Source: Guillardia theta CCMP2712 (Eukaryota; Protista; Cryptophyta). From it: a stretch of 64,000 nucleotides of DNA. Below the pieces are notes generated by a model. It ran no database searches. It was not told the origin of the DNA and worked only from the letters and a program-made list of their open reading frames with translations. Every line of letters starts with the position of its first letter. The first letter of the stretch is position 1. The translations under genes were made by a program, and so were the position numbers. The DNA lies in the NCBI RefSeq assembly GCF_000315625.1, contig NW_005434618.1:145038-209037 (forward strand), written 5' to 3'. Shown in pieces: positions 35,892-64,000 of the stretch.

Positions 35892-36049
35892 GGCGCCTCC
35901 GCCTTGAGAGAACGATCGTGGTCCTTTGGTTATTTTTGGCACCCCCACCCTATATACAAATGAATTTCCATGAAGACATACGCAGGTGTACGGTGAAAGG
36001 ATTAAAAAACTTTGAACTGTTGACAAGTCGAAAACAACATTTGCGAAGA

Positions 36050-36510: not shown

Positions 36511-36795
36511 AACGATAATGTAAAATCTGAGGCGGACCCGTAAATCATAGAACCGGCGGTTACTTTAGGGCCGAAGTTTTACTCAATGAATACGAGACCG
36601 GCCCTATCGGTTTTTTTGGCTCATCCTCCCCGCGCAGTCACGAAAAGCGCTGGGAATGGGCGCTGGACGAGATGCAGGAAGTAACGGAACGGTAAGGTGA
36701 GCAGCATTTAGATATGTAGGTCCGAATGACATTGTTCTTGTGAGTCAGGTTGGGGACAACATGACAAGCTTAAATTTCCTCCTATAGTGCAGGAT

Positions 36796-39700
36796 ATGAT
36801 GCCAAAGCTTGAAATAATCTGCAGGATTCTGATTTTACTCATAGCGTGTGGATTTCGAGGTAAGGTCCCCTTCTGTGTTTTATCAGTAACACTTTATTGC
36901 AGAACTAAGTTGTGTAAATGTTTTCAATATCAATCCTTCAAAGGGGCCACAAACGGGAGGTACTGAAGTGACAATATCTGGGTCTGACTTCCACAGGGGA
37001 AAAACGAGCTGTAGGTTCGGAAGTGGAACAAGTACTGAAACAGCATTATTCTTTAGTGATAGCAAGATATCTTGTGTCAGTCCTCCTTCGGCAGATCTTG
37101 GAGCCGTTTCATTAGAGGTTTCAATTGATAGTTCAGCATCCTTGGACTCGTTTACAAACAGCGGAGTATTCTTTTTCTATCAAGGTAAGATGATTAAACA
37201 TGTTCGTTTGCGATCATGACACCAATGTCTCAGCTTTCCCATCTGTGAACAGTCTTCAACCTTCTGCTGGTCCGCAATTGGGAGGAACTCAAATCACTTT
37301 GAAAGGGGATGGATTTGAGAATGACCAGGATTCCTTCTGCCGATTTTTGCTCGCGGAGAACAATTACATAGCAGTCCCAACCAGATGGCTTGGTCCATCA
37401 GAGATCATTTGTACTTCTCCAACTTCGGATAATGTTGGACTTGTAACCATAGATGTCACAAACAATGCTTTGGACTTTTCTGTAACGAGCGTTTTTTTCG
37501 CTTACAGACTTCCAGAAAGTATTGGTTTCATTGTTCCTTCTCTGGGACCTATCTTGGGTGGGACAAACATATCTGTATATGGACGGAACTTCGTGAATTC
37601 GGATTCCTTAGCTTGTAAATTTGGAAATATCATAGCAAAAGCCAACTTCGTAAATGAATCATGTATCATTTGTTTTTCTCCATCTCTCTCAGAGGGGATC
37701 TGGATTGTTGAGGTTTCGAACAATTTGGTGGATTTCTCGAACAATTTGGTGGATTTCAAGGTTTATGCTTTGATTGACATAGAAGAAATCTATCCTCTTG
37801 CACTTGACCGTTCGATCAAGGATTTGAAAATAGTTTCTTCTCCTTTCATTCCTCCGTTGGATTTTGTACAGTGCAAATTTGATTCGTACATTGTGAATGG
37901 AACGTTCTCTGGCACCTTCTGCATTTCATATGTGGGGTCAATTTGTAATCTGTCAGGGTTTGTATCCATTGTTTGTCCAGTTCCTTATAGTCAACTTATG
38001 GCAACGAGAATACAGCTGGAATATTCCTTGGATGGTCACACGTTCCTTCCTACAGGAGTAAGTCTTGCAGTGCGAGAAGTGACGAATGGCACCTTGTATA
38101 TACAGCCCACGTTTGCGTTTCAGAGGTATGCTCCTTTTTGACATTTAGGTTTCTGACATTTCATTAGTGGCATTCCGGTGACCATCAGTGGGATATCTGG
38201 CTTAGTTTTCCCACCGACTTCATGCAAATTTGGCAACGCTATTTCTCCTGTCGTTCGATACATGAATTCTGATGAAATTGTTTGTATTGCTCCTGATTGC
38301 TATCACACAGAATGCATGGCTGGAGTGCAAGTCTATGTACAATTACCGTTTGAATCCAATCATATTTTGGTGTTGGAATCCTTTTATTACATCTCCGAGC
38401 CACTCATCATATCCGTGCTTCCTTCAGAGGGACCAGATGCAGGTTCTAGTGAAGTCCTTCTGTACGGGATGGGATTTCCGGCATACGAAGGAGGAGGTTG
38501 CTACTTCAACAACACATTCGTAAAAGCTGTGATGCAGTCCAGTTCGTTGTGGAAATGTATTTCTCCTCCAATGGCACCAGGGCAGATTGAACTTTCAGTA
38601 GGGTTTGATTTTATGAAAAGCGTCGAAGGCTCAACAGAATTTCACTACTATAGATCTCCAATCATATTGGAAGCAGCGCCTAGTACAGGTCCAACGACAG
38701 GTTCAACAATTGTATCAATTTCAGGGTCAGATTTCTATTTCTCGTATCATTTGAAGTGTAAATTCAATGGCGCAGAAATTGAAGCTACATGGATATCGAA
38801 CTCATTGCTGAAATGCCAATCAATACCTTCTAAAAGGCCTGGAATTGTCCAGATTCAAGTTTCATTCAATGGATACGATTACTTGACGAATGAAATGTCC
38901 TTCTTATATTTTCAAACACTGAATTTGATGAAAGTGATACCATCTGTTGGCATCGAGGGGATGGAATCAACGATTACTCTTGTCGGGCAGGCCTTCAGCT
39001 CCTCTCTGTTTTTGTCTTGCAAATTTGTTCAAGGTGCCAAAACATTGTATTCAAGGGCTATGGTAATATCATATTCACTTTGTGTCTGTAAGGTTCCACA
39101 ATATCCTCCTGGGATGATCAATCTTGCACTTTCGAGCAATTTTGCAGACTTAGCAAGCAGTAGCCTTCTGTTCCACGTTTTTGGACTACTGGAAATACAA
39201 TCAATCTATCCCACGATCATTGCATCCGAGGGTGGAAGTTCAATCACTGTCTTTGGTTCGAATTACGACCGTAACATTTCTTGTTGCATGTTTGAGGTTT
39301 TTCGTCAAACCGCAAATATCTTGTCTTCGTCTATGGTCGTGTGTGCAGCTCCGACCACTTGGCCAGGAAAGATTTCAGTATCTCTGTCTCATAACTGCAA
39401 AGACATCGCTAGCTATCAGTACACTGTTCAAGCAATACGGAGTCCACAAATCATCAGTCTTAAGCCGACTTTAGGACCGGTCCAAGGAGGAATCTCCATT
39501 TCGATCTCTGGAATCTATTTCGATTCCTTTTCTGTTTGCTGCTTTGAAAGGTCTTGCAATCCAATCACTTTCTTAACTTCCAGCTTTCTCAATTGCTTAT
39601 CTGTTCCGAGCTCTCCAGGGAGTATTCAGGTCTTCATAAACACAAGCAACATCATTTCCAACAGTTTCCTTTTTGTTGCATTTGTCGAACCTCAAATTGT

Positions 39701-42700
39701 GAATGTTATTCCAACGTTAGGAATTCCTTCTACTGCTCTGCATGTCACCTTGACTGGAAACGAATTCCAAGAATCACGAACTTCTGTTTGCAAGTTTGGG
39801 TGTTGCACGTCACTTGTTGCCAAGATTTTATCGTCCAGTCAGGCTATATGTTCTATACCTCCATTGGCGTCTGGCGAATACGCTGTTGAATACACGAATG
39901 ATGGTATACATTTCAGCCAAAGTGGGTTTCTCTTCATGATTTTGAAACCACCATATCTGACAAGTGTCAGCCCGACATTTTCTTTTACGTCTCAAAGTGT
40001 CATGGTGTCAATGATTGGAATAAATTTTGTTCCTGACATCTTCAGTTGTAGATTTGGAAACAAGGATGTCATGGAAGCAAATTTTCTCTCTTCTAGCAAA
40101 TTACTTTGTATCAGCCCAATCGTACATGTTCCACAATCGATCTATGTAAGCCTTTTAGTCTATAATTCCTCGACTATTCATGGTCAAAGTAGTTTTGAAT
40201 TCATGTGCAATCCTGCTCAAATTTCGATCAGACTCAACGGAGCATCACAAATTATTTCACTAGTGGGGCAACATTTTGAAAAAGATAGAGTTTTCTGTCA
40301 ATTCAATTCTCTGGATGTTCAATCTGAATTTGTTTCCAGCAACCTTGTGTTATGCCAAGTACCAGGGAACACTGTCGGGGATGCCGTCTTATCGGTAACC
40401 TCGAAAGGGAATTGTTTGGGAGCCGAAATTCTCCATATAGATGCACCTCAAATTGTATCTTTAATGCCATCCGTATCGCCGTTGTCTGGTCAAAGGAACA
40501 TTACTGTTACGGGGTTTAGATTTCACTCTCAGAATTCCCGAATGTGTCTCTTTGGAAAATTGTCATCTCCAGCTGAAGTGTTGACTTCCTCTTTGATCTT
40601 CTGTACAACCCCAGCGCATTCCCAAGGCTTGTATGATTTCCAATTGTTCGATCGAAAAAATGCATCGTCTAACAAACTTTCGATCTTATATACTGATGTA
40701 GAGGAAATTTTTGAAATCCAGCCTTCAATTTCTTTGCTGTCTGGAGGAAGTTTGATTACTCTGTTTGGAGCAACAATCCCAGTCTACACATGTCATTTTC
40801 AAAGTCTGGCATCAAATGCCTCATTCCTTGATGATGAAAACTTTGTCGTGTGCGTGTCTCCTGCAAGCAAATTGACAGGGTCGGTAACCCTTTCCATATC
40901 TGCTGGGACTGGGCCTGAAGAAAAATCATTTGCGTTTTGGTATATCAGCCCAATTCAATTAAGCAAAGTCAATCCAATCAGCAGTCCTGTCCAGGGTGGT
41001 CAAATTGTGAGCATTTATGGAGATTTTGCTCCAATATTGAATTTACAATTCAGTTGTGTGATTGATTCTATTGAAATTGTCGCAGAGAGGCTCTCTAATT
41101 CTTGTATTATTTGCAGTACACCCTCCCATACTCCGGGATTGGTCAATGCTGAGATAGTGGTTCAAAACAACGTCAGTATTGCAGCATTCTTCTTGAAGTT
41201 TTACGAACCATTTTATGTAGACGACTTTTCCCCCAAATTCGGAACAACTTATGGAGGGTTGAGAATCAGTATTCGAGGCGTGTTTGATTCTGCCGAGTGC
41301 TATTGCTTGTTTGGTGCTGGCCCCATTGTCCAATGCAGCACGGTGGAGAAAGCTGTTGCAGAGTGTATTACACCTCCCAGTTCCGAACAAAACATCACAA
41401 TCAGAATTTCTCCTGACAGAGTTGCTTGGACTATCGTGGGAATTTTTCAATTTGTGGACTTCGGGCAAGATGCTTCTATTCATCCTTCTGTTGGATATTG
41501 CACTGGAAACACACAAATACAAATACGCTTATCAAATCGATTTGACAACATTTCAGACTTGAGTGTCTACTGTTCATTTCCCCGTATTGCAGTTGTAGAG
41601 AAAGGCAAATTCAGCTCTCAATCATTGGTGACATGTTCAATTCCAGGTCCTTTCATTGGGAAACAAAATTTCAATGTTTTCAGCGAGAGATTCAACTTCA
41701 ACAAAACTTTTTCATGCCTTCCACTCCCAAGAGTGACGCACATTCGACCCTCGACAGGTTCAACGAATGGAATGACACAGATATATTTACGCGGTGAAAA
41801 TTTTGTAGATGGAATGTCATGCCGATTTGGAGATGTTGGGACGGTGAATGCAACTTGGATAGACGATTTGACGATTGCTTGTATTTCTCCACCCTCCATG
41901 ACATTCGCGATCGTTCAGATTCAAGTAGGTCATCCTTCGCTACTTCTACATCCTACGTCAAATGGACAGATCTCAATTTTTGTGTATGAACCTGAAGCTT
42001 TGCTAGATTCTGTATTCCCTCGCTTCATTGCTGTGTCTCCACGCAGCACCGCAATCACCATGGTTGGAAGTAACTTTGCAGCCAGGGACGAACTTTCATG
42101 CATTATACGAAACCAAGAAAAAATTAACGCGATGTATATTTCTTCAAGTTTGGCGGTTTGTTTAGTTTCAAGCATGAAAGAAAATTCTATCAATGTTCAA
42201 GTCAGCAATAACGGAGTTGATACAAGTTCTCCTTTTGTTCTATACTCCTTGTCCAATCCATATGGCAAGGTGTTCATCAACCCAAGTCAGGGAAGCACTG
42301 AAGGTGGTACAGATATTGAAGTCAGCTTTCTCTTCACTGTTGAAAATTCCACTCATTTGTTTTGTATGATTGACCAGGTGATACTTCCCCTTAATTTTGC
42401 ATCCACAAGCACAGCGATTTGCAAGAGTCCTGCTCACTTTCAACCAGGACAAGTTGAGCTCAAGATAGTGGATGATGGAGGGTTTATATTTCATTCATCC
42501 TATTATGAATACTTGACGACTCCTGCGATCAATGAAATCCTCCCAAAGATTGTGTCCGTAAGAGGTGGTCAGGTGATCACAGTGTATGGTCAACACTTTG
42601 TCCCACAGCTATTATGTCAGGTAGGCAACTTTTCCATTGCAACATTCTTTGAGACATCGACAAAAGTAGCGTGTACAACTCCTTCTGCTTCAACTCCCGG

Positions 42701-45700
42701 ATTTTCTACTCTTTATTTGCTAATGGAAAAAGATAGCAATTATTTCAAGGCCAATTCACCATTTCAGTACTCGCAAGATGCTAGTATATTTCGGGTGAAG
42801 TCTAGCTCGAATCCTATCGGCACATTTGCTTCAACATTCACGGTTGTTGGAAGGAACTTCAGAGATAATGACAACCTCAACTGTGTCCTGGGCGGACATA
42901 GTAAAACTCAAGCTCGACTTTTGACCTCTTCATTAGTTTTGTGTCAAAGTGACCAGCCTCGTCTATCTAGCATGGTCTTGGTGTCTTTGGAAGGAATTCC
43001 TCTCGATCCCAAGTTCCAGTGGTGTAGCATGACTGTGAGCAGGAGGAGATCAATAACGCCTATAGGGCCATCTTGCGGACCAGTGTCAGGTGGAACTTAT
43101 ATCGAGTTCGACATGCCCAACTTGACAAACGAAGAGAGAGTTCTCTGTTTTTTCGGCGATCGAGATTCTCCAGCGATCGTTGTTCCCCCTAGCACGTTCT
43201 TCTGCAGATCTCCTCAATACGAGGACTCTTCATTTGTTTCGCTTCAAGTGTTCTCAAGTGCTGATAAGACAGTTTTTGAAAAGATCACCTTCGAATTCTA
43301 CCCAGACCCTTTCGTATACTACCTTCTACCGTCATTTGGACCTTCAAATAGGCACATGCAGATAACTGTTATCGGCAAGAATTTTCGGCCAAAGTTTTCA
43401 TGCTCCTTTGGGAAGAGTCTCTCTTCTCAAAAACATCTTTTTCAGTCTTCCTCCAGTATTATTTGCTTTATGGAAAAGGCAAATACAAATTCTTTTGCGA
43501 TTGAAATCAGTCTCAATGGACGTGACTTCACATCAAACAACAACATGTTTGTTTCTATTGATTTGTGTCAATTGTTTTCCGTCTCAGACCTTATAAGCTT
43601 GGACGGTTCTAGGCAGATGATTATTGTTGGACAAAACTTCACTAAGAATACTGAGATGGATTGCATTCTTGGAAAGAACATTTTTACCAAAGCAGAAGTG
43701 CTTAGTTCTTCTCTAATCAAGTGCAGCGCGGCAGGGTTGCCTGTTGGGAATTTTTCTGTAGCTTTGTCATACAAAGGATTCATCTTGAGCTCTAATTCAC
43801 TCAGATACGAATCTACCTTGAAAATGTTGAAGCTTGAAAGGCTCTATCCAAGCCATGGTCCCGTGAATGGTGGAACTCGCATTTACCTGTATTTGGGAGT
43901 GGGAGAATGTCTTACAAATTTGCAAGTTCAATTTATGTCCAACCAGATTCGATGCAAATGCGTGAATAGAACGGTTGCAGAATGTCTAGCTCCTCCTTCG
44001 CTGCGTGCAGGGATTATGAATCTGACCCTATTTTCCGAAAAGCATGATTTGTTTCTGCAAAATGCATTTACATACTACGCAGAACCCATTTTAAAAGCAA
44101 TAATCCCATCATCTGGATTGCCAAACTCACCAAACCTCATACAAGTGTATGGATCTGGCTTTCATGGTTCTGATATAGCACTTAAAGTGGGAGATATTAT
44201 GTTCAACAATTCCTACATCAAAATGATATCGTCTACAATGTTGGATTGCTCATTACCGGGATTTTCAGGGAAATTTCTCGAATCATACCCAGTGAGGATC
44301 AGTTTGAATGGCGGATCAGATTTTTCTACACAATTCATGACATACTCTTTATTGCCTTCTCCTGTGATTCACTCAGTAGTTCCTCAAATGGTTGAAGCAG
44401 TCAGTGACTCGTATTCAACCTCAATAACTTTGCAAGGAGCTGGTTTTGTTCGTGAAATTTCGTATTCCTGTGTTTTTCGAGGCCGAATTCGGACAAAAGG
44501 TTTATTTGTCAGCTATCATGCTATCCGTTGTGGAATTCCTCGTGACATAAATGGAGTTGTCTCCGTGGGGCTGGCAGTAGCGCACAGCCACGTACTGATC
44601 GGCGAATCTCGCCTCACAATTCTCAGGCAAGTCGATCGAATTTCAATTTCTCCTTCCTTCGGTCCGATCGGTGGAGGAACGGTCATTTACGTTCTTGGAT
44701 TTGGCATCTATCCTTCTTACTCAAAGCTCAGAATAAGAATTGGCAACCAAATTGTCCAAATGGATAAAAATTTCTCTTTTGTTTCTCCAGCAGTTCAGGG
44801 GCCAGGAAGGGTACAAATAGAGATTGTGCATTCGATTACTACTTCTTATGCAATAATGGATTATGATTATATTTTGAATCCTTCTATTGCAAAAGTCCTC
44901 CCAGACTTCAATTTTGTCAATCAACGGTCTGCGGTACAATTGATTGGGGAAAACTTCATCGATTCTCCTTCTACAATTTGTAAGTTTTGTGATTTTGAAA
45001 TTGTTGAAAAAGATCTGCAATTTCATTCCTCTTCTCTTATCATCTGTATTGCTCCTCGGCTGTCTTCGCCTGATATTTGTCCTATCACGATCAGTTTCGA
45101 TGGTGGCTTTAATTTCTTGGCACAAGCCAATGTTTTTAAAATTTTGCCTTTGCCACATGTGTTGAAAATACGCCCGAAATATGCGTTCGGCGACAGCACA
45201 CAATTGGTAACAATATTTGGAATGCATTTTCCATCCACGCATAACATCGAATGTTTGTATGGACAAAATGATTCAACTCGTGGAATTCATTACTCATCAT
45301 CCACCGTGATTTGCTATCTTCCAACTTCTTCTCCAGAAAATGTTCAGATATCCTTAATCTTTGATAGCGTCAAATTTACAGACAGGAAGTTGGTGATTGG
45401 TACTCTGAGTCGTGCATCGTTTACTATCAATCCTTCGAGTGGTCCAATTAACGGAGGAACGGTCATAACGATATTCCCGAGGTATTCCTGGATCTCAAAT
45501 TTCTTGAAATTTTGTGTTTTGAACAACCAGCTTATTTCGATATCAGAGGTCAACATGAAGTTCCAATGCATAAGTCCGTACAGCCTCTATCCAGGTGTAA
45601 CCACCCTACATGTCTGCAGCCAACGAAATAATTGCTTACAATACCAATATGAATTCCTTCCAGAGATTCAAATATTCAGCTTGCATCCAAGTTTTGGTAT

Positions 45701-48700
45701 GTGGGAACAATCGTGTTTGGTAACAATTGTAGGAAGTCATCTTGACATCAAGGGAATGAATATATTTGTAAATTCAAGGAGATTGAATACTTCCTCTCTC
45801 AAAGTAGTGACTTCATCGAAGATTCTTGGTGTCATCCCATCTTCACGAAATTTCGAGCAAACTAAGATTTCTGTTTACTCCACGGACATGGTCGAATTAC
45901 ATAGCTTCGCTTTTTCATACCAACAAGCAGCAATCATTGAACGAGTTTCTCCATCAATTGTCCAATCCTTTGAATCTAGTACGTTGACTGTCTATGGAAA
46001 CTTTTTCCACAACTCTAGAGAACTTCTCTGCGTTTTTGGATTTGGTCACAAAGTCGCAGCGCACTTCCTTACCTCCACCTTGGTCACATGTACTACCCAA
46101 CCTTTTGTGAACGGATGTGTATCCCTTCGGATGCAAAACGTCTTATATGACGTAAGCATGAAAGGTAAACAAGTCTGTTTTAGACAGAGATTAAAAGTTT
46201 TCAACATTCATCCTACAAGCAGCTGCTTCGCTGGCGGAACAAAGATATCAGTGCAGTTGAACAGCGCTTTTGAAGATTTTAACGGAATTCAATGCCACTT
46301 TGGAAGGTTGGTTTCGGAAGCTACTCTAGTGAATGGATCTACAATTGAATGTATAGCCCCATCTTCGCATCAATCATTCTCCGTCGATGTCAGACTTTCT
46401 AAAAATTCCTTATACCTAGATGGGCATTTCAAGTTTGAATACATCAGAGCACCTCAGATTTTTGGAATATATCCATCCTGGAGTACAACATTTGGAAGGA
46501 CGATTGTACAGGTCAATGGAAGATACTTTACAAAAGAAAGTATGGAAATTGCTCTTGGGAACACACTTCTTAACTCCAAGAGTCTTACTTTCCTTACTTC
46601 CACTGTCATCAAAATTGTTGTTCCAAGCAGCAACGGAACATTGGGAATAACCAGTCTCCAGATCTGTAACAAGTTTTGTCCAGATAGCAAAGAAATCACT
46701 GATTTTGAGTATGTTTCAGAGATCCAAATCACAGGGGTAATTCCGTCGTTCTCTGATGGGCAGGGACATGTTGTGACAATTCAAGGGAAAAATTTCAATA
46801 CAAAACTTGAATATTGTTGCAAGTTTGGTGCATCATTTGCAACGATAAGTAAAGTATTGACTGATTCAGTGATGACTTGTTATTTTCCGAGTATGAGTGA
46901 GGGTACTATGGTCAGGGTCCAGATCGGTCCAGCATGTCAGTTTGTGACAACAAGTCATCTATGGATCAGCGTAAATATTCCCGAGCTCTTGATTGACATT
47001 TTCCCCACTCTTGGACCAATGAAAGGTGGAACTCTCATTCACTTGGTGCTGCCTGAACCAAAAGTCTCGATTGATTTCAGTAAGGGCATATGCAGTTTTG
47101 GAAATCATTCCACTTCGATTGCAATTATCAAAAATATGCCTGTCTGTGGCTCAACTCCAGATGTGCTTACACCACAACGTAAAACCCTTGTTGCTGCGTT
47201 GTCTAACTCTAGGATGCGTTTGAGAGCCAAAACAGGTTTTCTTTTCTATGAAGACCCAAACATTTATTCCATTTATCCCTCCATCGTTAAAAGCCATGGT
47301 GGCCAGATTGTGAGCGTCTACGGCACTGGCTTTCGGCAAGGAGGGATTTCGTGTGGATTTGGCAGCGGCTTCTCCATAGCAGCTGGCCGATGGCAATCTT
47401 CTAGTCTAGTACTATGCTTCACCATACCCTCTAACCAAACTACAACAAGATCGCTGGAGATCAGCTTGAATGGAGGGTATGACTTCACTGATAGCGGTGC
47501 AGAGATACTATACGAGGACGGAGCTGTCTTGACAGGTGTGAGCCCTTCGAGAGCGATGAGCGATACGCCCAACCAGGTTGTCACCATTTCCGGAGACTCT
47601 TTCAAGCAAGGCTGTCGACATGTCTGTCACTTTGGAACAAGTGCAGAAACGCGTGCTGTATATCTCACGTCATCCAGCTTGGTATGCTCCGTGCCAAGGA
47701 GCAAGCCGAGCACTGTTTTGTTGACAGTAGCTCAGGATGGGTTGAAGAGTGAGGAAGGGGTTTGGTTTGTTTACGAGCATTATCATTCAGCTGACTTGAG
47801 CCCGAGCACTGGGTCATCCTTGGGGGGCACAGAAGTGACGGTTCGGAGCAACACGCTTCAAGACACCTATACGGAAGGAGGCTGTTGGTTTGGCAGTGCG
47901 TATGTGCCAGGACGCATCGTTGCTCGTAACAGTCTTGTCTGTGTCAGCCCACAGTACCTTGGCAACGACAAAGTGGTAGGGGTGAAGGTCATGCTGCACC
48001 GAGCGGAAGGAGGAGATGTGTACCTGGATACGAGTTTCGCATACAGGGTTCCGGCGTTGACTGATAGAGTTACTCCGACCGTGGGATCGAAGAACGGAGG
48101 TACTTCTGTGCTCGTTGTTGGATCCAACCTAGAGCCATCACATAGATGCCTGTTCGGCGGAGTTGAGGCAGCCCGTTCCCAGCTGATATCATCATCGGCT
48201 CTTGAGTGTTTTACACCTGCATCAAGCTTTGTTGGACGTGTTGTTGTACAAGTGAGCCTTGACGGCAGTATAGAAATGTCTGCCATGAAGCTGAGCTTCA
48301 CATATGCACCTGATGCAACGGTACACTTTGCGAACATGGGCTCGATGGTATATCAGAGTGTTGTGGTTCTGACTGGAGAGCACTTTCAGGACAGCAATTC
48401 ACTGACGTGCAAATTTGGTGGATCCAAATCAGTACTTGGTTTATATCAGACTTCAACCCTGGTGCAATGCTCTGTGCCGATGCTTGATACTGGCACATAT
48501 GCTGTCGGAATCAGTAACAATGGAGTAGATCGCGGAGTAGGTGCTGCAGTGGTCCAGTATAGGAATGCGATACAGATCTTTGATGTAACTCCTAGCCAGG
48601 GATCACTGTCAGGAGGAGGGCAGATCACTGTCCATGGAAGTGGTTTTCCTACACAAGATGGCCCCGCGTTGTGCTGGGTAGACCAGGTGTCTTCAGTTGC

Positions 48701-54700: not shown

Positions 54701-57700
54701 GCTGCTCTGTAGTGCACCTATCGTATATCATGAACGAGTGGTACATGTCACTTTTACGGTTGATGGTCAAGAATACCTTGATGGTGTAGAAGTCTCAAGA
54801 TTCGTCTATGTAAAGACTCCTCAGGTTTTCGAAGTAGTGCACAACCATTGCATCAGAGATGAGGATTTGATTACAGTTGTTGGAGACAGCTTTTCAGAAC
54901 TGTCAGTTTCTGAATGTCGATTTGCACATAGAACGACAACTCGTGGCTTTCTGATGTCTTCTTCAGCGATAACATGCTCTGTGCCACAAATTTCCTACAA
55001 GCAAACTCTGCTCAACATTGTGGTTGATGGAAGGAAGATCTTCAAGTCTGAAATTTCAAAATGTCAGCGCGATGGAGTCAGAATACATCCAAGTCTTGGT
55101 CCCAGCACCGGAGGATCCCAAATATTGGTGGAGAGCCAACATCAAGAAATGCGCCCTCGTGACCCAGTACGGTGCTGGTTCAGACAATCTGTAGTACAAG
55201 GGAGATGGATAGCCTCAAACAAAGTTGAATGTATTTCACCTCCTTTCTCAGGTCTACATAATTCCACAGAAGCTGTAACACTGTCAGTTATCAGCGGAAG
55301 CTACAAAATGGAATCCATATTCTTATACTTTGTACCATCCCAAATATACGACATTACCCCAAGGACAACTTATGCCGGCACATCTCAAACATTGACAGTG
55401 ATTGGACAGGCATTTCATGGCGAGCTTGTGCCATCTTGCATCTTCAATCGCTTGACGAGAAGAAGCGATGTGAAAACATTGTCATCAACAAAACTCGTGT
55501 GCAATGTCGGCAACTTGCAGGCATCAAATTATTTCCTTACAATTGAGTACAAGTACACAGGTAATCAAAGTTCAACGAACCCGATTTTGATCGAGCTCCT
55601 GAAGCCTCCACAAATTGAATCACTGACCTCCGAGATGAAAACTAGCAACCCCCCGATCATACAATTGAGAGGCAAACATTTCAATCCGTACCAGCATCGT
55701 CTTGACTGCTGGTTCGGCTTCCGAGTGAGCACTCCAGCCCTCTATTCCAGCTCTACTCTGGTCAAGTGTGCCGTGCCGAAGCTCCTTCCCGGTACCGTCG
55801 CTGTTTACTTGGGCGATGAGCAGGGCATACATGGCAATAGCAACGGTCAATACACGGTCGTAAGTAGGGGACATGTCCATGCAGTCGAGCCGAGCAGCGG
55901 GCCGGTGACAGGAGGTACCGCCGTCGTCATGAGCGTGCGAGGAGGTGCAGGCTTTGCGTCAGCTATCTTCTGTCGTATTGGGGAAGGTCAGGTGGTGCAG
56001 GCCCAAGCGCTCAGCAGCTCCAGGATCCTTTGCACCATGCCGGCTGTACAGAAGAGCGGGACAGTGCTGATACGGGCAGTAGAGGGAGCCCAAGGGTCGA
56101 GTAGGGGCCTTGAGGGAGAAGTGAGGTATGTTTACTACAATGAGCCTGTGGTGACTCGCGTGGAGCCAAGCAGTGGCGCTCTGGAAGGGGGTACCATGCT
56201 GAGCCTGTATGGGCGGGGGCTGGAAGAAGGCAGCAATCTAACGTGCAGGTTCGGGACCGGAGATGCGGTCGCAGGCCGGCAAGAGACTTCTACGATGGCC
56301 ACCTGTGTTGCACCCCCGCGCCCAGTCAAGGACGTCGTCTGGTTGCAGGTGAGCCTCAACGGAGGCGCGGACTTCTCCGGATCTGCAGTCGAGTACGCAT
56401 ATGAGGCTGGGGCTACGGTGGACGAGGTGAGGCCGTCCGCGGGAGATAGCGGGGTCGACGGTCAGACCGTGACGGTGATAGGCCGCCACTTCGGGTCGGG
56501 ACAAGGGCTGAGCTGCTTGTTCGGGACAAGGGGGCGGGTACGGGGCATGCCGATGACGTCGACGGCGGTAGTCTGTGTAGCGCCGAGAGGGGGTCCGGGG
56601 GCGGTCGGGGTATCGGTGAGCAACAACGGAGTGGATGAAGGGCAAACAAGGGGCGGGTTCGTGTACAGCGGTGATCTTAAGGTAATACGCAAGGTCACCC
56701 CAAGCTCAGGGCCATTGGCTGGGGGTACCAACGTGACCATAGCAGTCGACGGTTTGCGTCGGGCGGCGTTGTTATGGAAGTCGGAAATGCCTTTGTGGTG
56801 TTTATTCCGGGGAATTTCGGAAAACAGAAACGCAGTAAGGGGACGGGCTTTGACCACGTCGCTGATCAGCTGTAAGTCGCCTACAAGCTTGCGGGCAGGA
56901 GAAACGAAGATAGAGATAGAACTGTCCAACCATGGTCCAACATTGAGTATAGAGTCTGCATTCGTCTACTACGAGGGGCCAGAGGTAAGCTCGGTGGTGC
57001 CCAGCATAGGGAGACAGACGGGAGGTATGGTGGTAAGTGTCGTGGGCCAGGGCCTCATATCCCGAGATCCCGTTTGTCAATTTGGCCCGTCCATAGTCCA
57101 GGGCAAGGACGTTACGAGCCTTAGCTCATCATTGCTGCTATGTACCACGCCCGCATCACTGCTTGGCAGTACGGTAGTCAGGCTGCAGGTGAGCCTCAAC
57201 GGAGGCGCGGACTTCTCCGGATCTGCAGTCGAGTACGCATATGAGGCCGGGGCTACGGTGGACGAGGTGAGGCCGTCCGCGGGAGATAGCGGGGTCGACG
57301 GGCAGACCGTGACGGTGATAGGCCGCCACTTCGGGTCGGGACAAGGGCTGAGCTGCTTGTTCGGGACAAGGGGGCGGGTACGGGGCATGCCGATGACGTC
57401 GACGGCGGTAGTCTGTGTAGCGCCGAGAGGGGGTCCGGGGGCGGTCGGGGTATCGGTGAGCAACAACGGAGTAGAAGGAGAGACCGCTAGCGGCATCGTC
57501 AGCGTGAGGTATGAGTACCGCTCAGGGATGTCAGCAAAGTCCGTGGTACCTAGTCAGGGACCGTCAGTGGGAGGAACGGTCGTGAGAGTGATGCTTGAAG
57601 GGACGATCGGAGGTGAGGACGGGACTGGGGAGTGGCTCTGTGTATTCGGAGACTCTATGAGCCGCGGGCAATTGAACGTGTCATCGCCGGACAACGCTTC

Positions 57701-60700
57701 CGTGGCATGCAATCTGCCACCATCGATGCCCTCTACCGTCTCTGTACAAGTGCGACGACCGAGTGGACAGAAGCTATCAGGGGACCTAAGGTTCCAGTAC
57801 GTACTTCAAGCCAGGCTCATAAGTGTATCTCCAAGTCAAGGTGGAGCAGGGGGAGGATCGAGGGTGACCATCACAGGAGAGGGAATCGGGCGAGAGGGGC
57901 TGAGGTGCTGGTTTGGGGACAAGGCCGTGGAGGGGAGAGGCGTGGAGTGGATATCGTCAAGCCTGGTGACGTGCATGACTGTAGCAATGAATGAGGCGGG
58001 AGGATATTCCAAGATCTTGCTTTATTTTCAGGGACAGATTTGTGGACCACCCGTAATTTATAATGGTGTTGGTATTCCCCTTCTCAAGAGTATCAGTCCT
58101 TCTATTGGTATTGTCAACCTTCAAGGTCAGATTGCAACCTTGATAGGAGAGGGCTTTCATCTCAATGCTGCTTCAGTCTACTGTAGGCTTGGCTTAGGAC
58201 ACACAGTACGTGCTGTAAGTGTATCATCATCAATGGCTGTGTGTACAGTACCTTTGGTCAAACAGGCTGGACTTTCTCAGTTCACATGTTCGCCATACAA
58301 GCAACCGAGTGGCAGTGAGCAAAGTCTACAGTACTTGTTCTTGGACATAGGAAGAATTGATGCTATCTTTCCCACAGCTGGACCCATACGTGGAGGCAGT
58401 AGTGTAAGCGTGATTGGTCTGAAAGAACATGAAATTAGCTTCAAATACAGGTGCCGATTTGGGAACGATGAGGTGCAAGGAAGCTTTGTTGGAAACCATA
58501 CTTTGGTCTGCACCTCTCCTCAAACTAATCAAGAAGGAAGAGTTACTGTCTCAGTATTTGCCAATAGATACAGCCTGGACAATGGTCAAGTTTACGAGTA
58601 TTTCCTCTCTCCAGCCCTAAAGAGAATAGATCCATCTGTGGTAGGTAGGGGAGGTGGCCAGATTGTGAGCGTCTACGGCACTGGCTTTCGGCAAGGAGGG
58701 ATTTCGTGTGGATTTGGCAGCGGCTTCTCCATAGCAGCTGGCCGATGGCAATCTTCTAGTCTAGTACTATGCTTCACCATACCCTCTAACCAAACTACAA
58801 CAAGATCGCTGGAGATCAGCTTGAATGGAGGGTATGACTTCACTGATAGCGGTGCAGAGATACTATACGAGGACGGAGCTGTCTTGACAGGTGTGAGCCC
58901 TTCGAGAGCGATGAGCGATACGCCCAACCAGGTTGTCACCATTTCCGGAGACTCTTTCAAGCAAGGCTGTCGACATGTCTGTCACTTTGGAACAAGTGCA
59001 GAAACGCGTGCTGTATATCTCACGTCATCCAGCTTGGTATGCTCCGTGCCAAGGAGCAAGCCGAGCACTGTTTTGTTGACAGTAGCTCAGGATGGGTTGA
59101 AGAGTGAGGAAGGGGTTTGGTTTGTTTACGAGCATTATCATTCAGCTGACTTGAGCCCGAGCACTGGGTCATCCTTGGGGGGCACAGAAGTGACGGTTCG
59201 GAGCAACACGCTTCAAGACACCTATACGGAAGGAGGCTGTTGGTTTGGCAGTGCGTATGTGCCAGGACGCATCGTTGCTCGTAACAGTCTTGTCTGTGTC
59301 AGCCCACAGTACCTTGGCAACGACAAAGTGGTAGGGGTGAAGGTCATGCTGCACCGAGCGGAAGGAGGAGATGTGTACCTGGATACGAGTTTCGCATACA
59401 GGGTTCCGGCGTTGACTGATAGAGTTACTCCGACCGTGGGATCGAAGAACGGAGGTACTTCTGTGCTCGTTGTTGGATCCAACCTAGAGCCATCACATAG
59501 ATGCCTGTTCGGCGGAGTTGAGGCAGCCCGTTCCCAGCTGATATCATCATCGGCTCTTGAGTGTCTTACACCTGCATCAAGCTTTGTTGGACGTGTTGTT
59601 GTACAAGTGAGCCTTGACGGCAGTATAGAAATGTCTGCCATGAAGCTGAGCTTCACATATGCACCTGATGCAACGGTACACTTTGCGAACATGGGCTCGA
59701 TGGTATATCAGAGTGTTGTGGTTCTGACTGGAGAGCACTTTCAGGACAGCAATTCACTGACGTGCAAATTTGGTGGATCCAAATCAGTACTTGGTTTATA
59801 TCAGACTTCAACCCTGGTGCAATGCTCTGTGCCGATGCTTGATACTGGCACATATGCTGTCGGAATCAGTAACAATGGAGTAGATCGCGGAGTAGGTGCT
59901 GCAGTGGTCCAGTATAGGTATGCGATACAGATCTTTGATGTAACTCCTAGCCAGGGATCACTGTCAGGAGGAGGGCAGATCACTGTCCATGGAAGTGGTT
60001 TTCCTACACAAGATGGCCCCGCGTTGTGCTGGGTAGACCAGGTGTCTTCAGTTGCGATCGCTCAGCATTCGTCGCATGTGGTATGCATATTACCAGGACG
60101 GCAAGAGGCTGGTGTTGTAGACGTCTACTTGCAGTGGGGACGAGTAGCTGGGAGGAGTACTCATGTTCTATTTGAATATATCAATCCTGCGGAAATCGTG
60201 GGCATCATGCCGAGTGTCGGGAGCCTCAAGCCACGTTCAGGGTCAAGGGTAACTGTCATTGGGTCAGGCTTCGACGCGGGAGTGGGGCTGCGATGTCGAT
60301 TTGGTAACGCGAATTGTACAAGGTCCGCAGTGAAGTGGGTAACGTCCAGTCTAATACAGTGCTTGGTACCCGAACAATCTGTGCCGGGACCTGTAGAAGT
60401 GAAAGTCAGCAATGATGGAGGGAGGGAGTACTCGACAAACGGACCAGCTTTTCTTTACGAGGACCCCCCTTCTGTACACGGGATATTTCCAAAAGTCATC
60501 AGGCCAGGGGTCTCACATCAAAGCACGATATCTGTGATTGGGAAGCTTTTCAAGAACGTACCAAATTATGTATCGTGTCTCTATGGCAGTAATAGTATCA
60601 TACAGGGGGATTACATCTCATCGACACTCATTGTCTGCCAAACACCGAGAAATGTCAGTGGGACAGTGGCTGTTGCGGTCAGGACAGGTTGGCATGGGTT

Positions 60701-63700
60701 TGTGTCGGGGCCAGGATGTTTTGTGTCTGTGCTAGGAGCTCAATCCTTCATGATTCAACCTACCTCTGGCCCATTGAGTGGAGGGACCCTTGTAACAATT
60801 ACTGGGATCCACTCCGGCATGTATGATACAACAGAAGAAATCTGCTGTTTCTTTGGGCACAACGGTACGAAAGTCACTTTGCTAAGCACTTCAGCCGTCC
60901 TTTGCACAGTGCCGGCAAGCTTCAGGTATGGTGTGGTTACCGTGAGTGTACTTACGACATGCCGAGCAAGTGGTACCCTTGTGGGCACGAGGCCCTTTCT
61001 GTACCTGCCGGCAGTACATGTCGTCGATATCTATCCAAGACGAGGGTCCCAACATGGCCGATCATCAATACGAATCATAGGAATAGGCTTCTTGGGAGAC
61101 CGAGCAAGGTGTAAACTTGGGAATCTGTCTTCTCCCGAGGATGGAACGAGGATTGTCTCCTCCACTCTCATCGAATGCATTGCTCCTATTTCCGAGGCAA
61201 TAGGTCAGACCTTGGTCAGAGTAAGCTTGGACGGTGGGCAGACGTTCTCATCAGACGAGGTGGTCTTCACATACGAGGCTGACCCGACCGTGCTCTCTCT
61301 TCAGCCTTCAACAGCCTACAGCAAGATGAGCAACCAAGTTGTGACTGTCCACGGAAGGCATTTCACCGACGCCGGAGATCTTCTCTGTTGGTTTGGAGCA
61401 GGCCATGTCGTACGCGCTTTGTATGTGTCTTCTGTGAGAGTGCTGTGCTCTATTCCAGAGCAAAAGCCTGGTATGGTAAGAGTGACTGTGACCAAGGATG
61501 GTCATAATAATGCTCCTATCGATGCTTTAGCTTCTGCCTACTTGTTGTATCTGTATTACAACAAAGGAATGAACTCTAGATTTACAATCTGGCCGACCAG
61601 CGGTCCATCTCTGGGAGGCTCAGTCGTACGACTGGTTGGTATTCAGGACTCACTGAAGATCTCAACTTGTTTATTTGATTACCAGACGGTCAACGTCGCA
61701 GTTTACAACCACAGCATTGCATGTGTATCCCCTGCACATGGAGAAACAGGTTCTGTCAAAATACAGCTCGTCCCATCGAGTCTATCCTCTCTCTCTGGCG
61801 TGGTGGACTTTGATCAAGCCGTGACTTTCTTCTATTATGATGATCCTGTCGTTGACAGTGCGTTCTGGGTTGGGCAATCTGGCGGAGGTACGGCCTTCGT
61901 CAGTGTACTTGGCAGACATCTCATGGCCAATCACTCCATGTGTCGATTGACTTTTGAGTCTGGAGACAGCAAGGTACTCCCAGGCACGAGCCAGACTTCC
62001 ACCAAGATTCTTTGTGTGTCTCCTCCTCTTCCGCAAAGCGTAGGCAGGACTTGGGTATCGATCAGTTTGAACGATGGTGTAGACTTCACCTCAAGTAACA
62101 CCCTAGTATCGACAAGCAGCAAGATCGATGTAAAGAGTGTGTGGCCGTCCACAGGAGGTACAGATGGAGACATGGTGATTACAATCTTTGGTGCGATGTT
62201 CTATCCGCGCCAGCATCGTCTTGACTGCTGGTTCGGCTTCCGAGTGAGCACTCCAGCCCTCTATTCCAGCTCTACTCTGGTCAAGTGTGCCGTGCCGAAG
62301 CTCCTTCCCGGTACCGTCGCTGTGTACTTGGGCGATGAGCAGGGCATACATGGCAATAGCAACGGTCAATACACGGTCGTAAGTAGGGGACATGTCCATG
62401 CAGTCGAGCCGAGCAGCGGGCCGGTGACAGGAGGTACCGCCGTCGTCATGAGCGTGCGAGGAGGTGCAGGCTTTGCGTCAGCTATCTTCTGTCGTATTGG
62501 GGAAGGTCAGGTGGTGCAGGCCCAAGCGCTCAGCAGCTCCAGGATCCTTTGCACCATGCCGGCTGTACAGAAGAGCGGGACAGTGCTGATACGGGCAGTA
62601 GAGGGAGCCCAAGGGTCGAGTAGGGGCCTTGAGGGAGAAGTGAGGTATGTTTACTACAATGAGCCTGTGGTGACTCGCGTGGAGCCAAGCAGTGGCGCTC
62701 TGGAAGGGGGTACCATGCTGAGCCTGTATGGGCGGGGGCTGGAAGAAGGCAGCAATCTAACGTGCAGGTTCGGGACCGGAGATGCGGTCGCAGGCCGGCA
62801 AGAGACTTCTACGATGGCCACCTGTGTTGCACCCCCGCGCCCAGTCAAGGACGTCGTCTGGTTGCAGGTGAGCCTCAACGGAGGCGCGGACTTCTCCGGA
62901 TCTGCAGTCGAGTACGCATATGAGGCCGGGGCTACGGTGGACGAGGTGAGGCCGTCCGCGGGAGATAGCGGGGTCGACGGTCAGACCGTGACCGTGATAG
63001 GCCGCCACTTCGGGTCGGGACAAGGGCTGAGCTGCTTGTTCGGGACAAGGGGGCGGGTACGGGGCATGCCGATGACGTCGACGGCGGTAGTCTGTGTAGC
63101 GCCGAGAGGGGGTCCGGGGGCGGTCGGGGTATCGGTGAGCAACAACGGAGTGGATGAAGGGCAAACAAGGGGCGGGTTCGTGTACAGCGGTGATCTTAAG
63201 GTAATACGCAAGGTCACCCCAAGCTCAGGGCCGTTGGCTGGGGGTACCAACGTGACCATAGCAGTCGACGGTTTGCGTCGGGCGGCGTTGTCATGGACGA
63301 CAGAGAGACCTTGGGGTTGCGTTTTTGGAACCTCAGTCGTGCAAGCACAAGCTTTGACCACGTCGCTGATCAGCTGTAAGTCGCCTACAAGCTTGCGGGC
63401 AGGAGAAACGAAGATGTCGTTGGTGGACGATCTTGGTAACGTCGTTGTCAAGGGCAAGTCTGCATTCGTCTACTACGAGGGGCCAGAGGTAAGCTCGGTG
63501 GTGCCCAGCATAGGGAGACAGACGGGAGGTATGGTGGTAAGTGTCGTGGGCCAGGGCCTCATATCCCGAGATCCCGTTTGTCAATTTGGCCCGTCCATAG
63601 TCCAGGGCAAGGACGTTACGAGCCTTAGCTCATCATTGCTGCTATGTACCACGCCCGCATCACTGCTTGGCAGTACGGTAGTCAGGCTGCAGGTGAGCCT

Positions 63701-64000
63701 CAACGGAGGCGCGGACTTCTCCGGATCTGCAGTCGAGTACGCATATGAGGCCGGGGCTACGGTGGACGAGGTGAGGCCGTCCGCGGGAGATAGCGGGGTC
63801 GACGGGCAGACCGTGACGGTGATAGGCCGCCACTTCGGGTCGGGACAAGGGCTGAGCTGCTTGTTCGGGACAAGGGGGCGGGTACGGGGCATGCCGATGA
63901 CGTCGACGGCGGTAGTCTGTGTAGCGCCGAGAGGGGGTCCGGGGGCGGTCGGGGTATCGGTGAGCAACAACGGAGTAGAAGGAGAGACCGCTAGCGGCAT
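36796..64000 (+). CDS. giant secreted/cell-surface IPT/TIG (Ig-like) repeat protein, >9,000 aa, truncated by the window end
   Basis: Signal peptide MMPKLEIICRILILLIACGFR|ELSC; introns at ~36860-36902, 37184-37233 and 38126-38167. One reading frame then runs from 38169 to 64000 with repeated P.SGP..GGT.VTI.G.NF...C.FG...S...C..P...V.VS.NG.DF units. The ORF track shows no stop-terminated + ORF in that frame after 38169. Confidence 0.93.
37716..37757. repeat. 21-bp in-frame tandem duplication (SNNLVDF x2)
   Basis: tcgaacaatttggtggatttc repeated twice. Confidence 0.9.
47298..52645. repeat. copy A of a >=5.3-kb near-identical direct repeat (partner 58653-64000, offset 11,355 bp)
   Basis: Shadow ORFs recur at a constant offset (47814/59169, 48806/60161, 50427/61782, 52226/63581). 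Confidence 0.95.
51508..51796. repeat. 289-bp single-IPT-domain unit, six copies (51508, 52333, 56344, 57184, 62863, 63688)
   Basis: tgcaggtgagcctcaacggaggcgcggac...gagcaacaacggagt repeated nearly exactly. Confidence 0.93.
55691..57980. repeat. copy B: 2.3-kb duplicate of 50855-53129 (offset 4,836 then 4,851 bp)
   Basis: Identical shadow ORFs at 51402/56238 and 52781/57632; the offset shifts by 15 bp at a replaced patch. Confidence 0.95.
58653..64000. repeat. copy C of the long direct repeat (partner 47298-52645), runs off the window
   Basis: Begins at ggtggccagattgtgagcgtc; about 8 point differences and one 41-nt replaced patch relative to copy A, counted by eye. Confidence 0.95.

What the first reader, a model, noticed from the sequence alone, without database searches (positions are those of the whole stretch)
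36796..64000. Hidden giant gene: >25.8-kb single exon encoding about 100 tandem IPT/TIG Ig-like domains (>9,000 aa)
Seen: after three short introns the frame starting at 38169 is in register with the last codons at 63960+. Wherever I translated it, it reads as IPT/TIG units (PxxGPxxGGTxVTIxGxxF-CxFG-SSxxxxCxxP-VxVSxNGxDF). All listed + ORFs in this span are in the other two frames, as expected if this frame has no stop. A giant intronless exon is striking in a genome with introns every ~100-300 nt. Known: long IPT/TIG arrays occur in fibrocystin/PKHD1L1, plexins and the Dictyostelium Tgr allorecognition proteins. Inference: a titin-scale surface filament (adhesion, recognition, or anti-predator/virus coat). 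The domain count is estimated from ~90 aa per unit.
Basis: partly seen in the sequence, partly recalled or inferred. Interest (0 to 1): 0.9.

Follow-up and report, generated by a model that had tools for sequence, protein, structure and literature searches.

The report
Giant TIG-repeat membrane receptor gene
The alga Guillardia theta carries a real, transcribed gene of about 64 kb whose product (about 21,000 residues as assembled) is a chain of some 215 Ig-like TIG domains anchored to a conserved, uncharacterised multi-pass membrane module; the window shows only its first 40%.

Summary
Frame 3 has no stop from 38157 to the window end (8,614 codons, chance about 1e-180). It reads as TIG domains throughout, and 100 units lie in the window. 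The ATG at 36796 and three GT..AG introns of 43, 49 and 42 nt fit.

The gene is much larger than reported. It runs to C56:246370 and has about 215 TIG units as assembled. After the TIG array come Cys-rich repeats, a beta-sandwich, an 11-helix membrane module and an acidic tail.

Three frame breaks lie downstream of the window. Each sits at a ~90-nt patch copied from a paralogous repeat. For two of them, contigs from three sequencing runs carry other letters whose lengths restore the frame. The third has the same signature.

Hanusia phi transcripts match collinearly: 60% identity in the window part and 95% in the membrane module. Units 39-122 are near-identical cassettes, so the true unit count is uncertain.

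The membrane module defines an unnamed family (927 representatives) found in cryptophytes, oomycetes, a green alga and a jakobid. Its fold resembles OSCA/TMEM16/TMC only weakly. CRMP membership is not supported.

This scan had already found similar giant TIG genes on other contigs of this genome. The function proposed here, a tethered surface sensor, is inferred.

The parts
36796..36859 (+). Exon 1: start codon and signal-peptide-like N-terminus (MMPKLEIICRILILLIACGF), ends in phase 1
   Evidence: Sequence reading and phase check
36860..36902 (+). Intron 1, 43 nt, GT..AG
   Evidence: The spliced frame is open and the TIG unit is continuous. Not checked with reads.
36903..37184 (+). Exon 2: TIG unit 1
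   Evidence: Pfam TIG E 8.8e-07 on 36968-37219; own HMM
37185..37233 (+). Intron 2, 49 nt, GT..AG
   Evidence: Only this acceptor keeps the phase
37234..38125 (+). Exon 3: TIG units 2-3 plus a less typical ~110-aa stretch
   Evidence: Pfam TIG E 3e-22
38126..38167 (+). Intron 3, 42 nt, GT..AG
38168..64000 (+). Window part of the mega-exon. As corrected by reads, it runs to C56:244853 (extended coordinate 99816), about 61.6 kb.
   Evidence: No stop; TIG throughout
38168..47216 (+). Old, individualised TIG units 4-38. Each is at most 40% identical to any other unit, with GC3 0.32-0.47.
   Evidence: The collinear Hanusia phi transcript protein P0005 is 60% identical over 38571-44834, against ~23% in any other register.
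47235..64000 (+). Window part of the cassette block (units 39-122, ending at extended 70327). Units are 84-100% (mostly 96-100%) identical to a copy elsewhere in the block, apart from three interspersed units (64, 79, 80) with no close copy. GC3 reaches 0.77.
47298..57472 (+). Copy 1 of an ~11.4-kb (42-unit) tandem duplication
   Evidence: Self-BLAST: 99.4-99.6% identical to 58653-68895; 13 synonymous and 23 non-synonymous differences
58653..64000 (+). Copy 2 of the duplication (continues to extended 68895). Just past the window it contains the first frame break (64463-64554) and two N runs.

Best explanation
The stop-free frame is the 5' part of one very large protein-coding gene of Guillardia theta CCMP2712, at C56:181833-246370 (window 36796 to extended coordinate 101333).

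The gene has three tiny introns at each end and one ~61.6-kb exon between them. As assembled it encodes about 21,400 residues, in this order:
- a signal peptide
- about 215 tandem IPT/TIG domains
- about 550 aa of CPxGxxC repeats (ephrin-receptor-like)
- a ~550-aa region that ends in a beta-sandwich
- an 11-helix membrane module
- a ~350-aa acidic, Ser-rich tail with five basic amphipathic 'A(R/K)xIAxxWL' helices

Proposed mechanism: the TIG chain projects from the cell surface as a thin filament. At roughly 4 nm per domain it could reach about 0.8 um. The membrane module anchors it and converts pull or contact on the filament into a membrane event, either ion or lipid flux as in OSCA/TMEM63-type proteins or a signal through the cytosolic tail. 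The length of the filament is changed by unequal recombination of whole-unit cassettes of 3, 18 or 42 units.

Shown: the frame, the domains, the architecture, orthology and conservation in Hanusia, the family of the membrane module, and that two of the three frame breaks are assembly errors.

Inferred: continuity across the third break and the N runs, topology (N-terminus outside, tail inside), surface location, and the sensing function.
For: Frame and domains.

Gene ends. Homologues P0002-P0004 and the public fragment model GUITHDRAFT_141646 join the 3' exons in the same way.

Frame breaks: all three sit at the edge of 85-93-nt stretches that are 100% identical to another place in the gene. 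Contigs of three runs (X1, X2, X3), otherwise letter-perfect over 6 kb, replace L009:3302-3376 (75 nt) by 82 letters and L009:6499-6580 (82 nt) by 85 letters. These are exactly the lengths needed for one continuous frame. At the third break the foreign patch is 92 nt, while the sister copy has 94 nt between identical flanks, and +2 is what the frame needs.

Transcription: the transcriptome-sized runs X2 and X3 hold 95% and 87% of the words of window 36500-46499. They cover the 3' half with 3- to 10-fold 3' bias, unlike X1. True RNA reads (X17) do occur, but are rare. Hanusia phi transcript proteins are collinear with window 38571-44834 (60% identity) and with 90769-99849 (81%; 95% in the module). 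This places TIG array and module on one molecule.

Module family: 927 representatives, 248 below 1e-30. It usually lies C-terminal in proteins of 1,000-7,926 aa, and 69 of 153 carry TIG arrays. This protein keeps 9 of 9 invariant and 26 of 28 nearly invariant residues, 35 of 37 in all.

Fold: the model has pLDDT 90.6. Ten of the 20 best solved-structure matches are TMEM16, OSCA/TMEM63 or TMC (Z 6.5-8.2). The OSCA alignments begin at the model's first helix, as expected for OSCA's extra N-out helix.
Against: - The third break (64463-64554) and the two N runs (65315-65414, 65470-65584) were not checked with reads. As assembled, the window's frame stops at 64620.
- X2 and X3 are only guessed to be RNA. 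The one certain RNA run gave 5 reads on 6 kb.
- The letters that replace the two patches were not shown, so absence of stops inside them is assumed.
- The cassette block (84 units) may be mis-assembled. An unplaced scaffold, C515, holds a further copy.
- The fold matches are in the range that unrelated helical proteins can reach (note). Foldseek found nothing. No Pfam family matches the module. A profile-profile comparison with the genome's own OSCA-type exons gave 0.5% probability.
- There is no experimental evidence on location or function for any family member.
Confidence: 0.7

Rival explanations
1. The break just past the window is real. The window's frame would then encode a secreted, unanchored TIG-only protein of 9,230 residues that ends at 64620. 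The downstream TIG array with the membrane module would be a separate gene or untranslated.
For: As assembled there is a stop at 64620. That junction was not tested with reads. Earlier notes of this scan (not tested here) report TIG-only giant secreted proteins elsewhere in this genome.
Against: There is no 3' UTR, promoter, start codon or signal peptide at the break, and a TIG unit runs straight across it. The break has the same patch signature as two breaks shown to be assembly errors. Two other cassette copies pass the same point in frame.
Confidence: 0.1
2. The gene is real, but its size is an artefact of how near-identical cassettes were assembled. The true number of TIG units would differ from 215 by twenty or more, in either direction.
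For: 84 of the 215 units lie in the cassette block, and all but three of those have a copy there that is 84-100% (mostly 96-100%) identical. The 11.4-kb copies differ by only 0.4%. N runs and a patch lie inside the block. The unplaced scaffold C515 carries a further cassette copy with a junction not seen in C56.
Against: The two large copies differ at 36 substitution sites and several small indels, so they are not one sequence laid down twice. The 131 units outside the block are mostly unique.
Confidence: 0.45
3. The protein is a passive structural element. It would be a fibre of the cryptophyte surface coat or periplast, or an adhesin, held in the membrane by the module without any sensing or transport role.
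For: Long Ig-like arrays are typical of coats and adhesins. The distal units evolve fast (60% identity to Hanusia against 95% for the module). Copy number of the cassettes looks free to vary.
Against: A simple anchor needs one helix. Here an 11-helix module with invariant polar residues (R, D, S, E) and a long conserved tail is kept from jakobids to oomycetes.
Confidence: 0.25
4. The locus is a recently inactivated pseudogene whose frame is beginning to decay.
For: Three frame disruptions appear in the reference assembly.
Against: Two of the disruptions are absent from three independent runs. Open frames of 8,821 and 7,360 codons remain. The units are conserved one-to-one with transcripts of another genus.
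Confidence: 0.03

Closest known systems
Unnamed 'IPT/TIG domain-containing protein' family with the same C-terminal module. Examples: G. theta paralogue GUITHDRAFT_146773 (UniRef L1IFH9), Albugo laibachii F0WN37 (7,926 aa), Aphanomyces euteiches A0A6G0WXA6, and Pythium, Thraustotheca, Prasinoderma, Cantina and Andalucia proteins.
   Same: Same order of parts: TIG array, ephrin-receptor-like Cys repeats, beta-sandwich, 11-helix module, acidic tail. Profile E-values reach 1e-278, and all invariant residues are kept.
   Different: About 215 TIG units as assembled, against at most 54 in the 153 representatives examined. The family has no name, no Pfam model for the module and no studied member.
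Other giant TIG genes of G. theta found earlier by this scan (stop-free TIG frames on contigs C2, C25, C40, C67, C134)
   Same: Mega-exons of 8,500-16,500 codons made of TIG units, and cassette mosaics.
   Different: Only this gene and one on C134 (37% identical) carry this membrane module. The earlier notes describe the others as secreted or fused to different modules, which I did not test.
Fibrocystin (PKHD1) and PKHD1L1
   Same: Large surface proteins that begin with a signal peptide and many IPT/TIG domains.
   Different: No G8, PbH1 or PA14 region was found. This protein is multi-pass rather than single-pass, has about 15-fold more TIG units, and shows no sequence relation beyond the TIG domain.
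OSCA/TMEM63, TMEM16 and TMC (the transmembrane channel/scramblase superfamily, named in PMC11534332)
   Same: They provide the best solved-structure matches over the whole helical module. Eleven long helices with the N-terminus outside match the OSCA layout.
   Different: Z is only 6.5-8.2. Foldseek, Pfam and profile-profile comparison give no match. The model shows no large cytosolic domain between the second and third helices. Known members carry no giant ectodomain.
Apicomplexan and ciliate CRMPs (cysteine repeat modular proteins; PMC9670195, PMC9815656)
   Same: The overall design is similar: adhesive ectodomain, ephrin-receptor/EGF-like Cys repeats, multi-pass core, cytosolic tail.
   Different: CRMPs have a 9-TM core. 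The near-invariant motifs of this family (HGWK, SSQYY, CFSS) do not occur in the CRMP sequences held in the paper's supplement. CRMPs have no TIG array.
Hair-cell tip link plus TMC channel (functional analogy only, from general knowledge)
   Same: A long extracellular filament of Ig-like or cadherin-like domains is coupled to a channel of the same structural superfamily.
   Different: There the filament and the channel are separate proteins. Here they would be one polypeptide, and no gating has been shown.

Membership tests
IPT/TIG domain (Pfam PF01833) repeat proteins | Matches to the TIG profile above the gathering score | tested here: met
   604-715 bits per piece against a cut-off of 20.9. 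There are 158 separately scored stretches over the gene and 215 units with the gene's own HMM.
IPT/TIG domain (Pfam PF01833) repeat proteins | Regular ~90-aa period with the conserved G-P..GG..VT..G..F / C.FG / C..P core | tested here: met
   Median spacing is 86-90 aa in all pieces.
Unnamed TIG / Cys-repeat / 11-helix-module family | C-terminal module matches the family profile over its whole length and keeps the invariant residues | tested here: met
   Distant members match at 1e-50 to 1e-278 over profile positions ~195-809. All 9 invariant residues and 35 of 37 invariant or nearly invariant residues are present.
Unnamed TIG / Cys-repeat / 11-helix-module family | Same order of parts (TIG, ephrin-receptor-like repeats, module, acidic tail) | tested here: met
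Fibrocystin / PKHD1L1 | G8, PbH1 (parallel beta-helix) or PA14 region after the TIG domains | tested here: not met
   No such Pfam family at E <= 0.01 anywhere in the gene
Fibrocystin / PKHD1L1 | Single C-terminal transmembrane helix | tested here: not met
   Eleven long helices in the model and several hydrophobic segments
Plexin / Met | N-terminal Sema domain and PSI domains | tested here: not met
   No Sema or PSI hit. The TIG_plexin hits are overlaps of related TIG profiles.
CRMP (cysteine repeat modular proteins) | Cys-rich EGF or ephrin-receptor-like repeats before the membrane core | tested here: inconclusive
   About 55 Cys in CPxGxxC repeats. Pfam Ephrin_rec_like scores 21.6 bits, just under the cut-off of 23.1.
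CRMP (cysteine repeat modular proteins) | Homology of the multi-pass core to the conserved CRMP 9-TM core | tested here: not met
   A motif look-up in the CRMP sequences of PMC9815656's supplement found none of HGWK, SSQYY or CFSS, and the visible CRMP core reads differently. This is a crude test; no alignment was possible.
OSCA/TMEM63, TMEM16, TMC superfamily | Shared 10/11-helix fold | tested here: inconclusive
   Ten of the top 20 VIA-align matches are from this superfamily, with Z 6.5-8.2 and 189-279 residues aligned. Foldseek's best E-value is 0.07.
OSCA/TMEM63, TMEM16, TMC superfamily | Match to RSN1_7TM, Anoctamin or TMC sequence profiles | tested here: not met
   No Pfam hit up to E = 10 in ten diverse members. 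hhalign against two OSCA-type exons of this genome gave 0.5% probability, with a thin template.
OSCA/TMEM63, TMEM16, TMC superfamily | Ion conduction or lipid scrambling | not testable with these tools
   Needs reconstitution or electrophysiology

The most novel reading that the evidence does not exclude
The gene would encode a one-polypeptide tethered force sensor. A filament of ~215 TIG domains, close to a micrometre long, would pull directly on an OSCA/TMC-like pore in the same chain. That would be a single-gene counterpart of the tip-link-plus-TMC apparatus of hair cells. It would be used by a flagellate to detect contact (prey, predator, substrate or mate) and perhaps to trigger ejectisome discharge. 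Its module family would be an ancient, overlooked branch of the channel/scramblase superfamily, present from jakobids to oomycetes.
Probability: 0.12. Interest if true: 0.9.

Novelty: new variant of a known kind. Interest (0 to 1): 0.62.

Why it matters
If the assembly is right to within a few cassettes, this is among the longest protein-coding genes and polypeptides predicted in any eukaryote. From general knowledge, it is shorter than titin and the PKZILLA-1 synthase but in their range. The public annotation was found to cover only a 377-residue fragment at its 3' end, and no model of 1,100-3,500 aa turned up over 38157-44156.

More important than size is the link between the TIG array and a membrane module. 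That module is conserved across at least four eukaryotic supergroups and has no name, no Pfam model and no studied member. It is therefore a tractable entry to an unknown class of surface receptors in protists, including oomycete plant and animal pathogens.

The work also shows a specific, recurring error in this reference assembly: ~90-nt patches copied between paralogous repeats. These patches create false stops in long repeat genes, which matters for every other giant gene reported from this genome.

Tried and rejected
It was rejected for lack of the family's motifs in published CRMP sequences.
- The first structure prediction, with 5 sequences, gave pLDDT 36 and was discarded.
- Foldseek against the PDB and the ESM Atlas by shape (best match EMP70 at TM 0.29/0.34) gave nothing usable.
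- Atlas feature searches found only unnamed oomycete clusters and a weak lead to PF28488 (SPCC553.12c), which I did not follow.
- PDB sequence searches with two profiles found nothing.
- Pfam on the tail, the juxtamembrane region and ten modules found nothing.
- hhalign against OSCA-type exons of the same genome found nothing.
- I first read the frame switches at 64.5, 87.4 and 90.5 kb as possible introns or real frameshifts. Introns are excluded because the frames overlap by less than 140 nt and TIG units run across the switches. Real frameshifts are excluded for two of the three by reads.
- A first guess at the acceptor of intron 2 (37252) broke the frame and was replaced by 37233.
- No complex prediction was run, because the report claims no binding.
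Full report
COORDINATES. The window is G000:C56:145038-209037 (+) of an 87.1-Mb, 669-contig genome. I extended it with C56:209038-249037 (L007-L010). 'Extended' coordinates continue the window numbering, so extended x equals C56 position x + 145037.

THE ORGANISM. A 377-aa protein that is 100% identical to part of the locus is GUITHDRAFT_141646 of Guillardia theta CCMP2712. It lies on a 506,080-bp contig, the same length as C56.

THE OBSERVATION.
- Frame 3 is free of stops from 38157 to the window end (8,614 codons). No other + frame exceeds 453 codons. For random sequence the chance is about 1e-180.
- Pfam TIG matches all three thirds of the frame at E 4e-186 to 1e-201.
- An HMM trained on the gene finds units every ~90 aa without gaps. 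One hundred units start inside the window.
The ATG is at 36796 and the first exon is hydrophobic and signal-like. Three GT..AG introns of 43, 49 and 42 nt, once removed, give a continuous 9,230-codon frame in which TIG units run across the exon junctions.

THE GENE IS MUCH LARGER.
- The frame meets a stop at 64620. TIG-coding frames then continue at 64483-65314 (frame 1), 65585-87394 (frame 2, 7,270 codons after the N runs), 87361-90555 (frame 1) and 90574-99873 (frame 1).
- In all there are 215 TIG units.
- After the last unit (about 95277) come about 550 aa of CPxGxxC repeats, with Pfam Ephrin_rec_like just under its cut-off. A ~550-aa region without any Pfam match follows, and then a hydrophobic multi-helix region.
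- Three more short introns follow: 99817-99860, 100161-100212 and 100615-100691. The last exons encode the final two helices and an acidic, Ser-rich tail with five 'A(R/K)xIAxxWL' helices. The stop is at 101333.
- Homologues P0002-P0004 join these exons in the same way. For the first two of these introns, so does the public fragment model.
- As assembled, the gene spans 64.5 kb and about 21,400 codons.

THE FRAME BREAKS.
- None of the breaks can be an intron. The frames overlap by less than 140 nt and a TIG unit runs across each break.
- Each break lies at the edge of an 85-93-nt stretch that is 100% identical to another place in the gene, while the flanks are unrelated to that place.
- I laid four runs on L009:1501-7500, which covers the second and third breaks.
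All of them replace L009:3302-3376 (75 nt) by 82 letters and L009:6499-6580 (82 nt) by 85 letters.
- From the positions modulo 3, the first replacement shifts the frame by +1. That is exactly what joins frame 2 to frame 1.
- The second replacement keeps frame 1 and removes the stretch that holds the two stops.
- These two breaks are therefore errors of the reference. A short stretch was copied from a paralogous unit after a shared seed of 17-30 nt.
- The first break has the same signature. Copy 2 of the large duplication equals copy 1 on both sides (60-nt flanks identical). Between them it carries 92 nt identical to 70207-70298, where copy 1 has 94 nt, and +2 is the shift the frame needs.
- Two other cassette copies (70299, and C515:4545) pass the equivalent point in frame.

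REPEAT STRUCTURE.
- Units 1-38 (to 47216) and most of units 123-215 are individual. Each is at most ~40% identical to any other unit.
- Units 39-122 (47235-70327) form a block of recent cassettes. There is an 11.4-kb (42-unit) tandem duplication at 99.4-99.6% identity, inner 4.8-6.5-kb repeats at 96-98%, and small 3-unit duplications at 72.9-75.0 kb and 88.6-90.6 kb.
- The offsets are whole numbers of units (3, 18, 42), as expected from unequal exchange in register.
- The two large copies differ by 13 synonymous and 23 non-synonymous changes, roughly the neutral ratio, so the duplication is very recent.
- GC3 is 0.32-0.47 in the old units of the window and up to 0.77 in the cassettes. This would fit GC-biased gene conversion in the recombining part, which is an inference.
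- Scaffold C515 carries another cassette copy, joined to sequence like 75345. The copy number is therefore not settled.

EXPRESSION AND CONSERVATION.
- X2 and X3 have 44 and 40 Mb of contigs (transcriptome size) and are labelled RNA only by guess. They hold 95% and 87% of the sampled words of window 36500-46499.
- On the 3' half, their depth rises 10-fold and 3-fold on the last 11-kb contig, while X1's does not. This looks like the 3' bias of cDNA.
- The only certain RNA run (X17, 6% read) put 5 reads on 6 kb, so expression in that sample is very low.
- Independent support comes from Hanusia phi transcriptome proteins. P0005 (2,097 aa) is collinear with window 38571-44834 at 60% identity, against ~23% in any shifted register. 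Each unit therefore has its own conserved orthologue.
- P0001 (3,034 aa) is collinear with 90769-99849 at 81% identity, and 95% in the module. It carries 17 TIG units and the module on one molecule.

THE MEMBRANE MODULE.
- A profile of the cryptophyte modules finds 927 representatives (248 below 1e-30) among 1.84 billion proteins. The match is usually near the C-terminus of proteins of 1,000-7,926 aa.
- 69 of the 153 representatives examined have TIG arrays, with at most 54 units.
- Named members come from G. theta (paralogue GUITHDRAFT_146773; the own-genome match is at C134, 37% identical), oomycetes, Prasinoderma, Cantina and Andalucia. All are called hypothetical.
- Pythium and metagenomic members show the same TIG plus ephrin-receptor-like layout.
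- No Pfam family, PDB sequence or paper covers the module.
- With a 103-sequence alignment, AlphaFold gives pLDDT 90.6: a beta-sandwich followed by eleven long helices.
- Foldseek finds no PDB match.
- The exhaustive aligner puts TMEM16K, TMEM16F, TMC-2, afTMEM16, OSCA1.2, Ist2, OSCA2.3, TMEM63A, OSCA3.1 and TMEM16A among its top 20 (Z 6.5-8.2). The OSCA alignments start at the model's first helix.
- The tool's own note says such Z values can arise from a common helical arrangement. The enrichment for one superfamily is suggestive, not proof.
- Sequence-level tests were negative.

CONTEXT IN THE GENOME. TIG frames of 8,500-16,500 codons also exist on C2, C25 (two), C40, C67 and C134. Earlier reports of this scan describe several of them. 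This finding is therefore one more member of a class the scan has already met. It is distinguished by its membrane module and by the read-level resolution of its false stops.

VERDICT. The locus is a real, conserved and at least weakly transcribed giant gene. The window holds its signal peptide and the first 100 of about 215 TIG units. The most likely product is a very long surface filament anchored by a conserved module of unknown function, possibly OSCA-like. The unit count and the continuity across 64.5-65.6 kb still need long reads.

Noticed in passing
L009:3285-3377 and L009:6493-6580 (C56:232322-232414 and 235530-235617); window-extended 64463-64554: The reference assembly contains ~90-nt patches copied from paralogous repeat units. 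They create false frameshifts and stops. Three independent runs disagree with the assembly at exactly these places and nowhere else in 6 kb. Other long repeat genes of this assembly may hold the same kind of error.
   Followed up: partly
L014 (G000:C515:1-4639): This small unplaced scaffold is made of pieces of this gene. Two pieces are 99.8-99.9% identical to 73597-75345 and are separated by 302 N. They are joined to a cassette copy 98.3-98.7% identical to 62538-64555 / 68597-70362. That junction is not present in C56, so either another cassette copy or an alternative arrangement exists.
   Followed up: partly
window 47235-64000 versus 38168-47216: Base composition inside one exon is strongly uneven. 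GC3 is 0.32-0.47 in the old unique units and 0.6-0.77 in some recently copied units (for example 52380-52655, 57231-57506 and 63735-64010).
   Followed up: partly
L010:6213-7333 (extended 100213-101333): The cytosolic tail has five spaced basic amphipathic helices of the form A(R/K)xIAxxWLxxxR, separated by acidic Ser/Asp clusters (SDDE-like). The pattern is conserved in P0002 and P0004. It could be a binding platform (calmodulin- or centrin-like partners are a guess). There is no Pfam match.
   Followed up: partly
window 33927-35471 (- strand): Two long ORFs (285 and 194 aa), rich in hydrophobic segments, look like exons of a multi-pass transporter gene just upstream of the giant gene on the opposite strand.
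   Followed up: no
window 35850-36500: This is a GC-rich stretch with overlapping Pro/Gly/Arg-rich ORFs on both strands, directly upstream of the giant gene's start. It is probably low-complexity intergenic or promoter DNA.
   Followed up: no
window 36500-46499 (runs X7 and X13): A freshwater metagenome run holds 49% of the exact 31-letter words of this stretch, and a lake-water run holds 5%. That is unexpected for a marine culture strain. It may mean a very close relative in fresh water, or carry-over.
   Followed up: no
L009:1501-3301 (run X1): In the genomic run, the 5.5-kb contig covering extended 81747-87301 has about twice the word depth of its neighbours (153 against 69-80). This ratio is not seen in X2 or X3. 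It could be a collapsed extra copy or uneven coverage.
   Followed up: no
extended 99334-100614: The public model GUITHDRAFT_141646 starts at an internal Met of the module. It also skips 24 residues (VDPNEDESINEGIRSLDLLCFSSQ) that include one of the family's most conserved motifs, so that model is a fragment with a probably false intron.
   Followed up: yes
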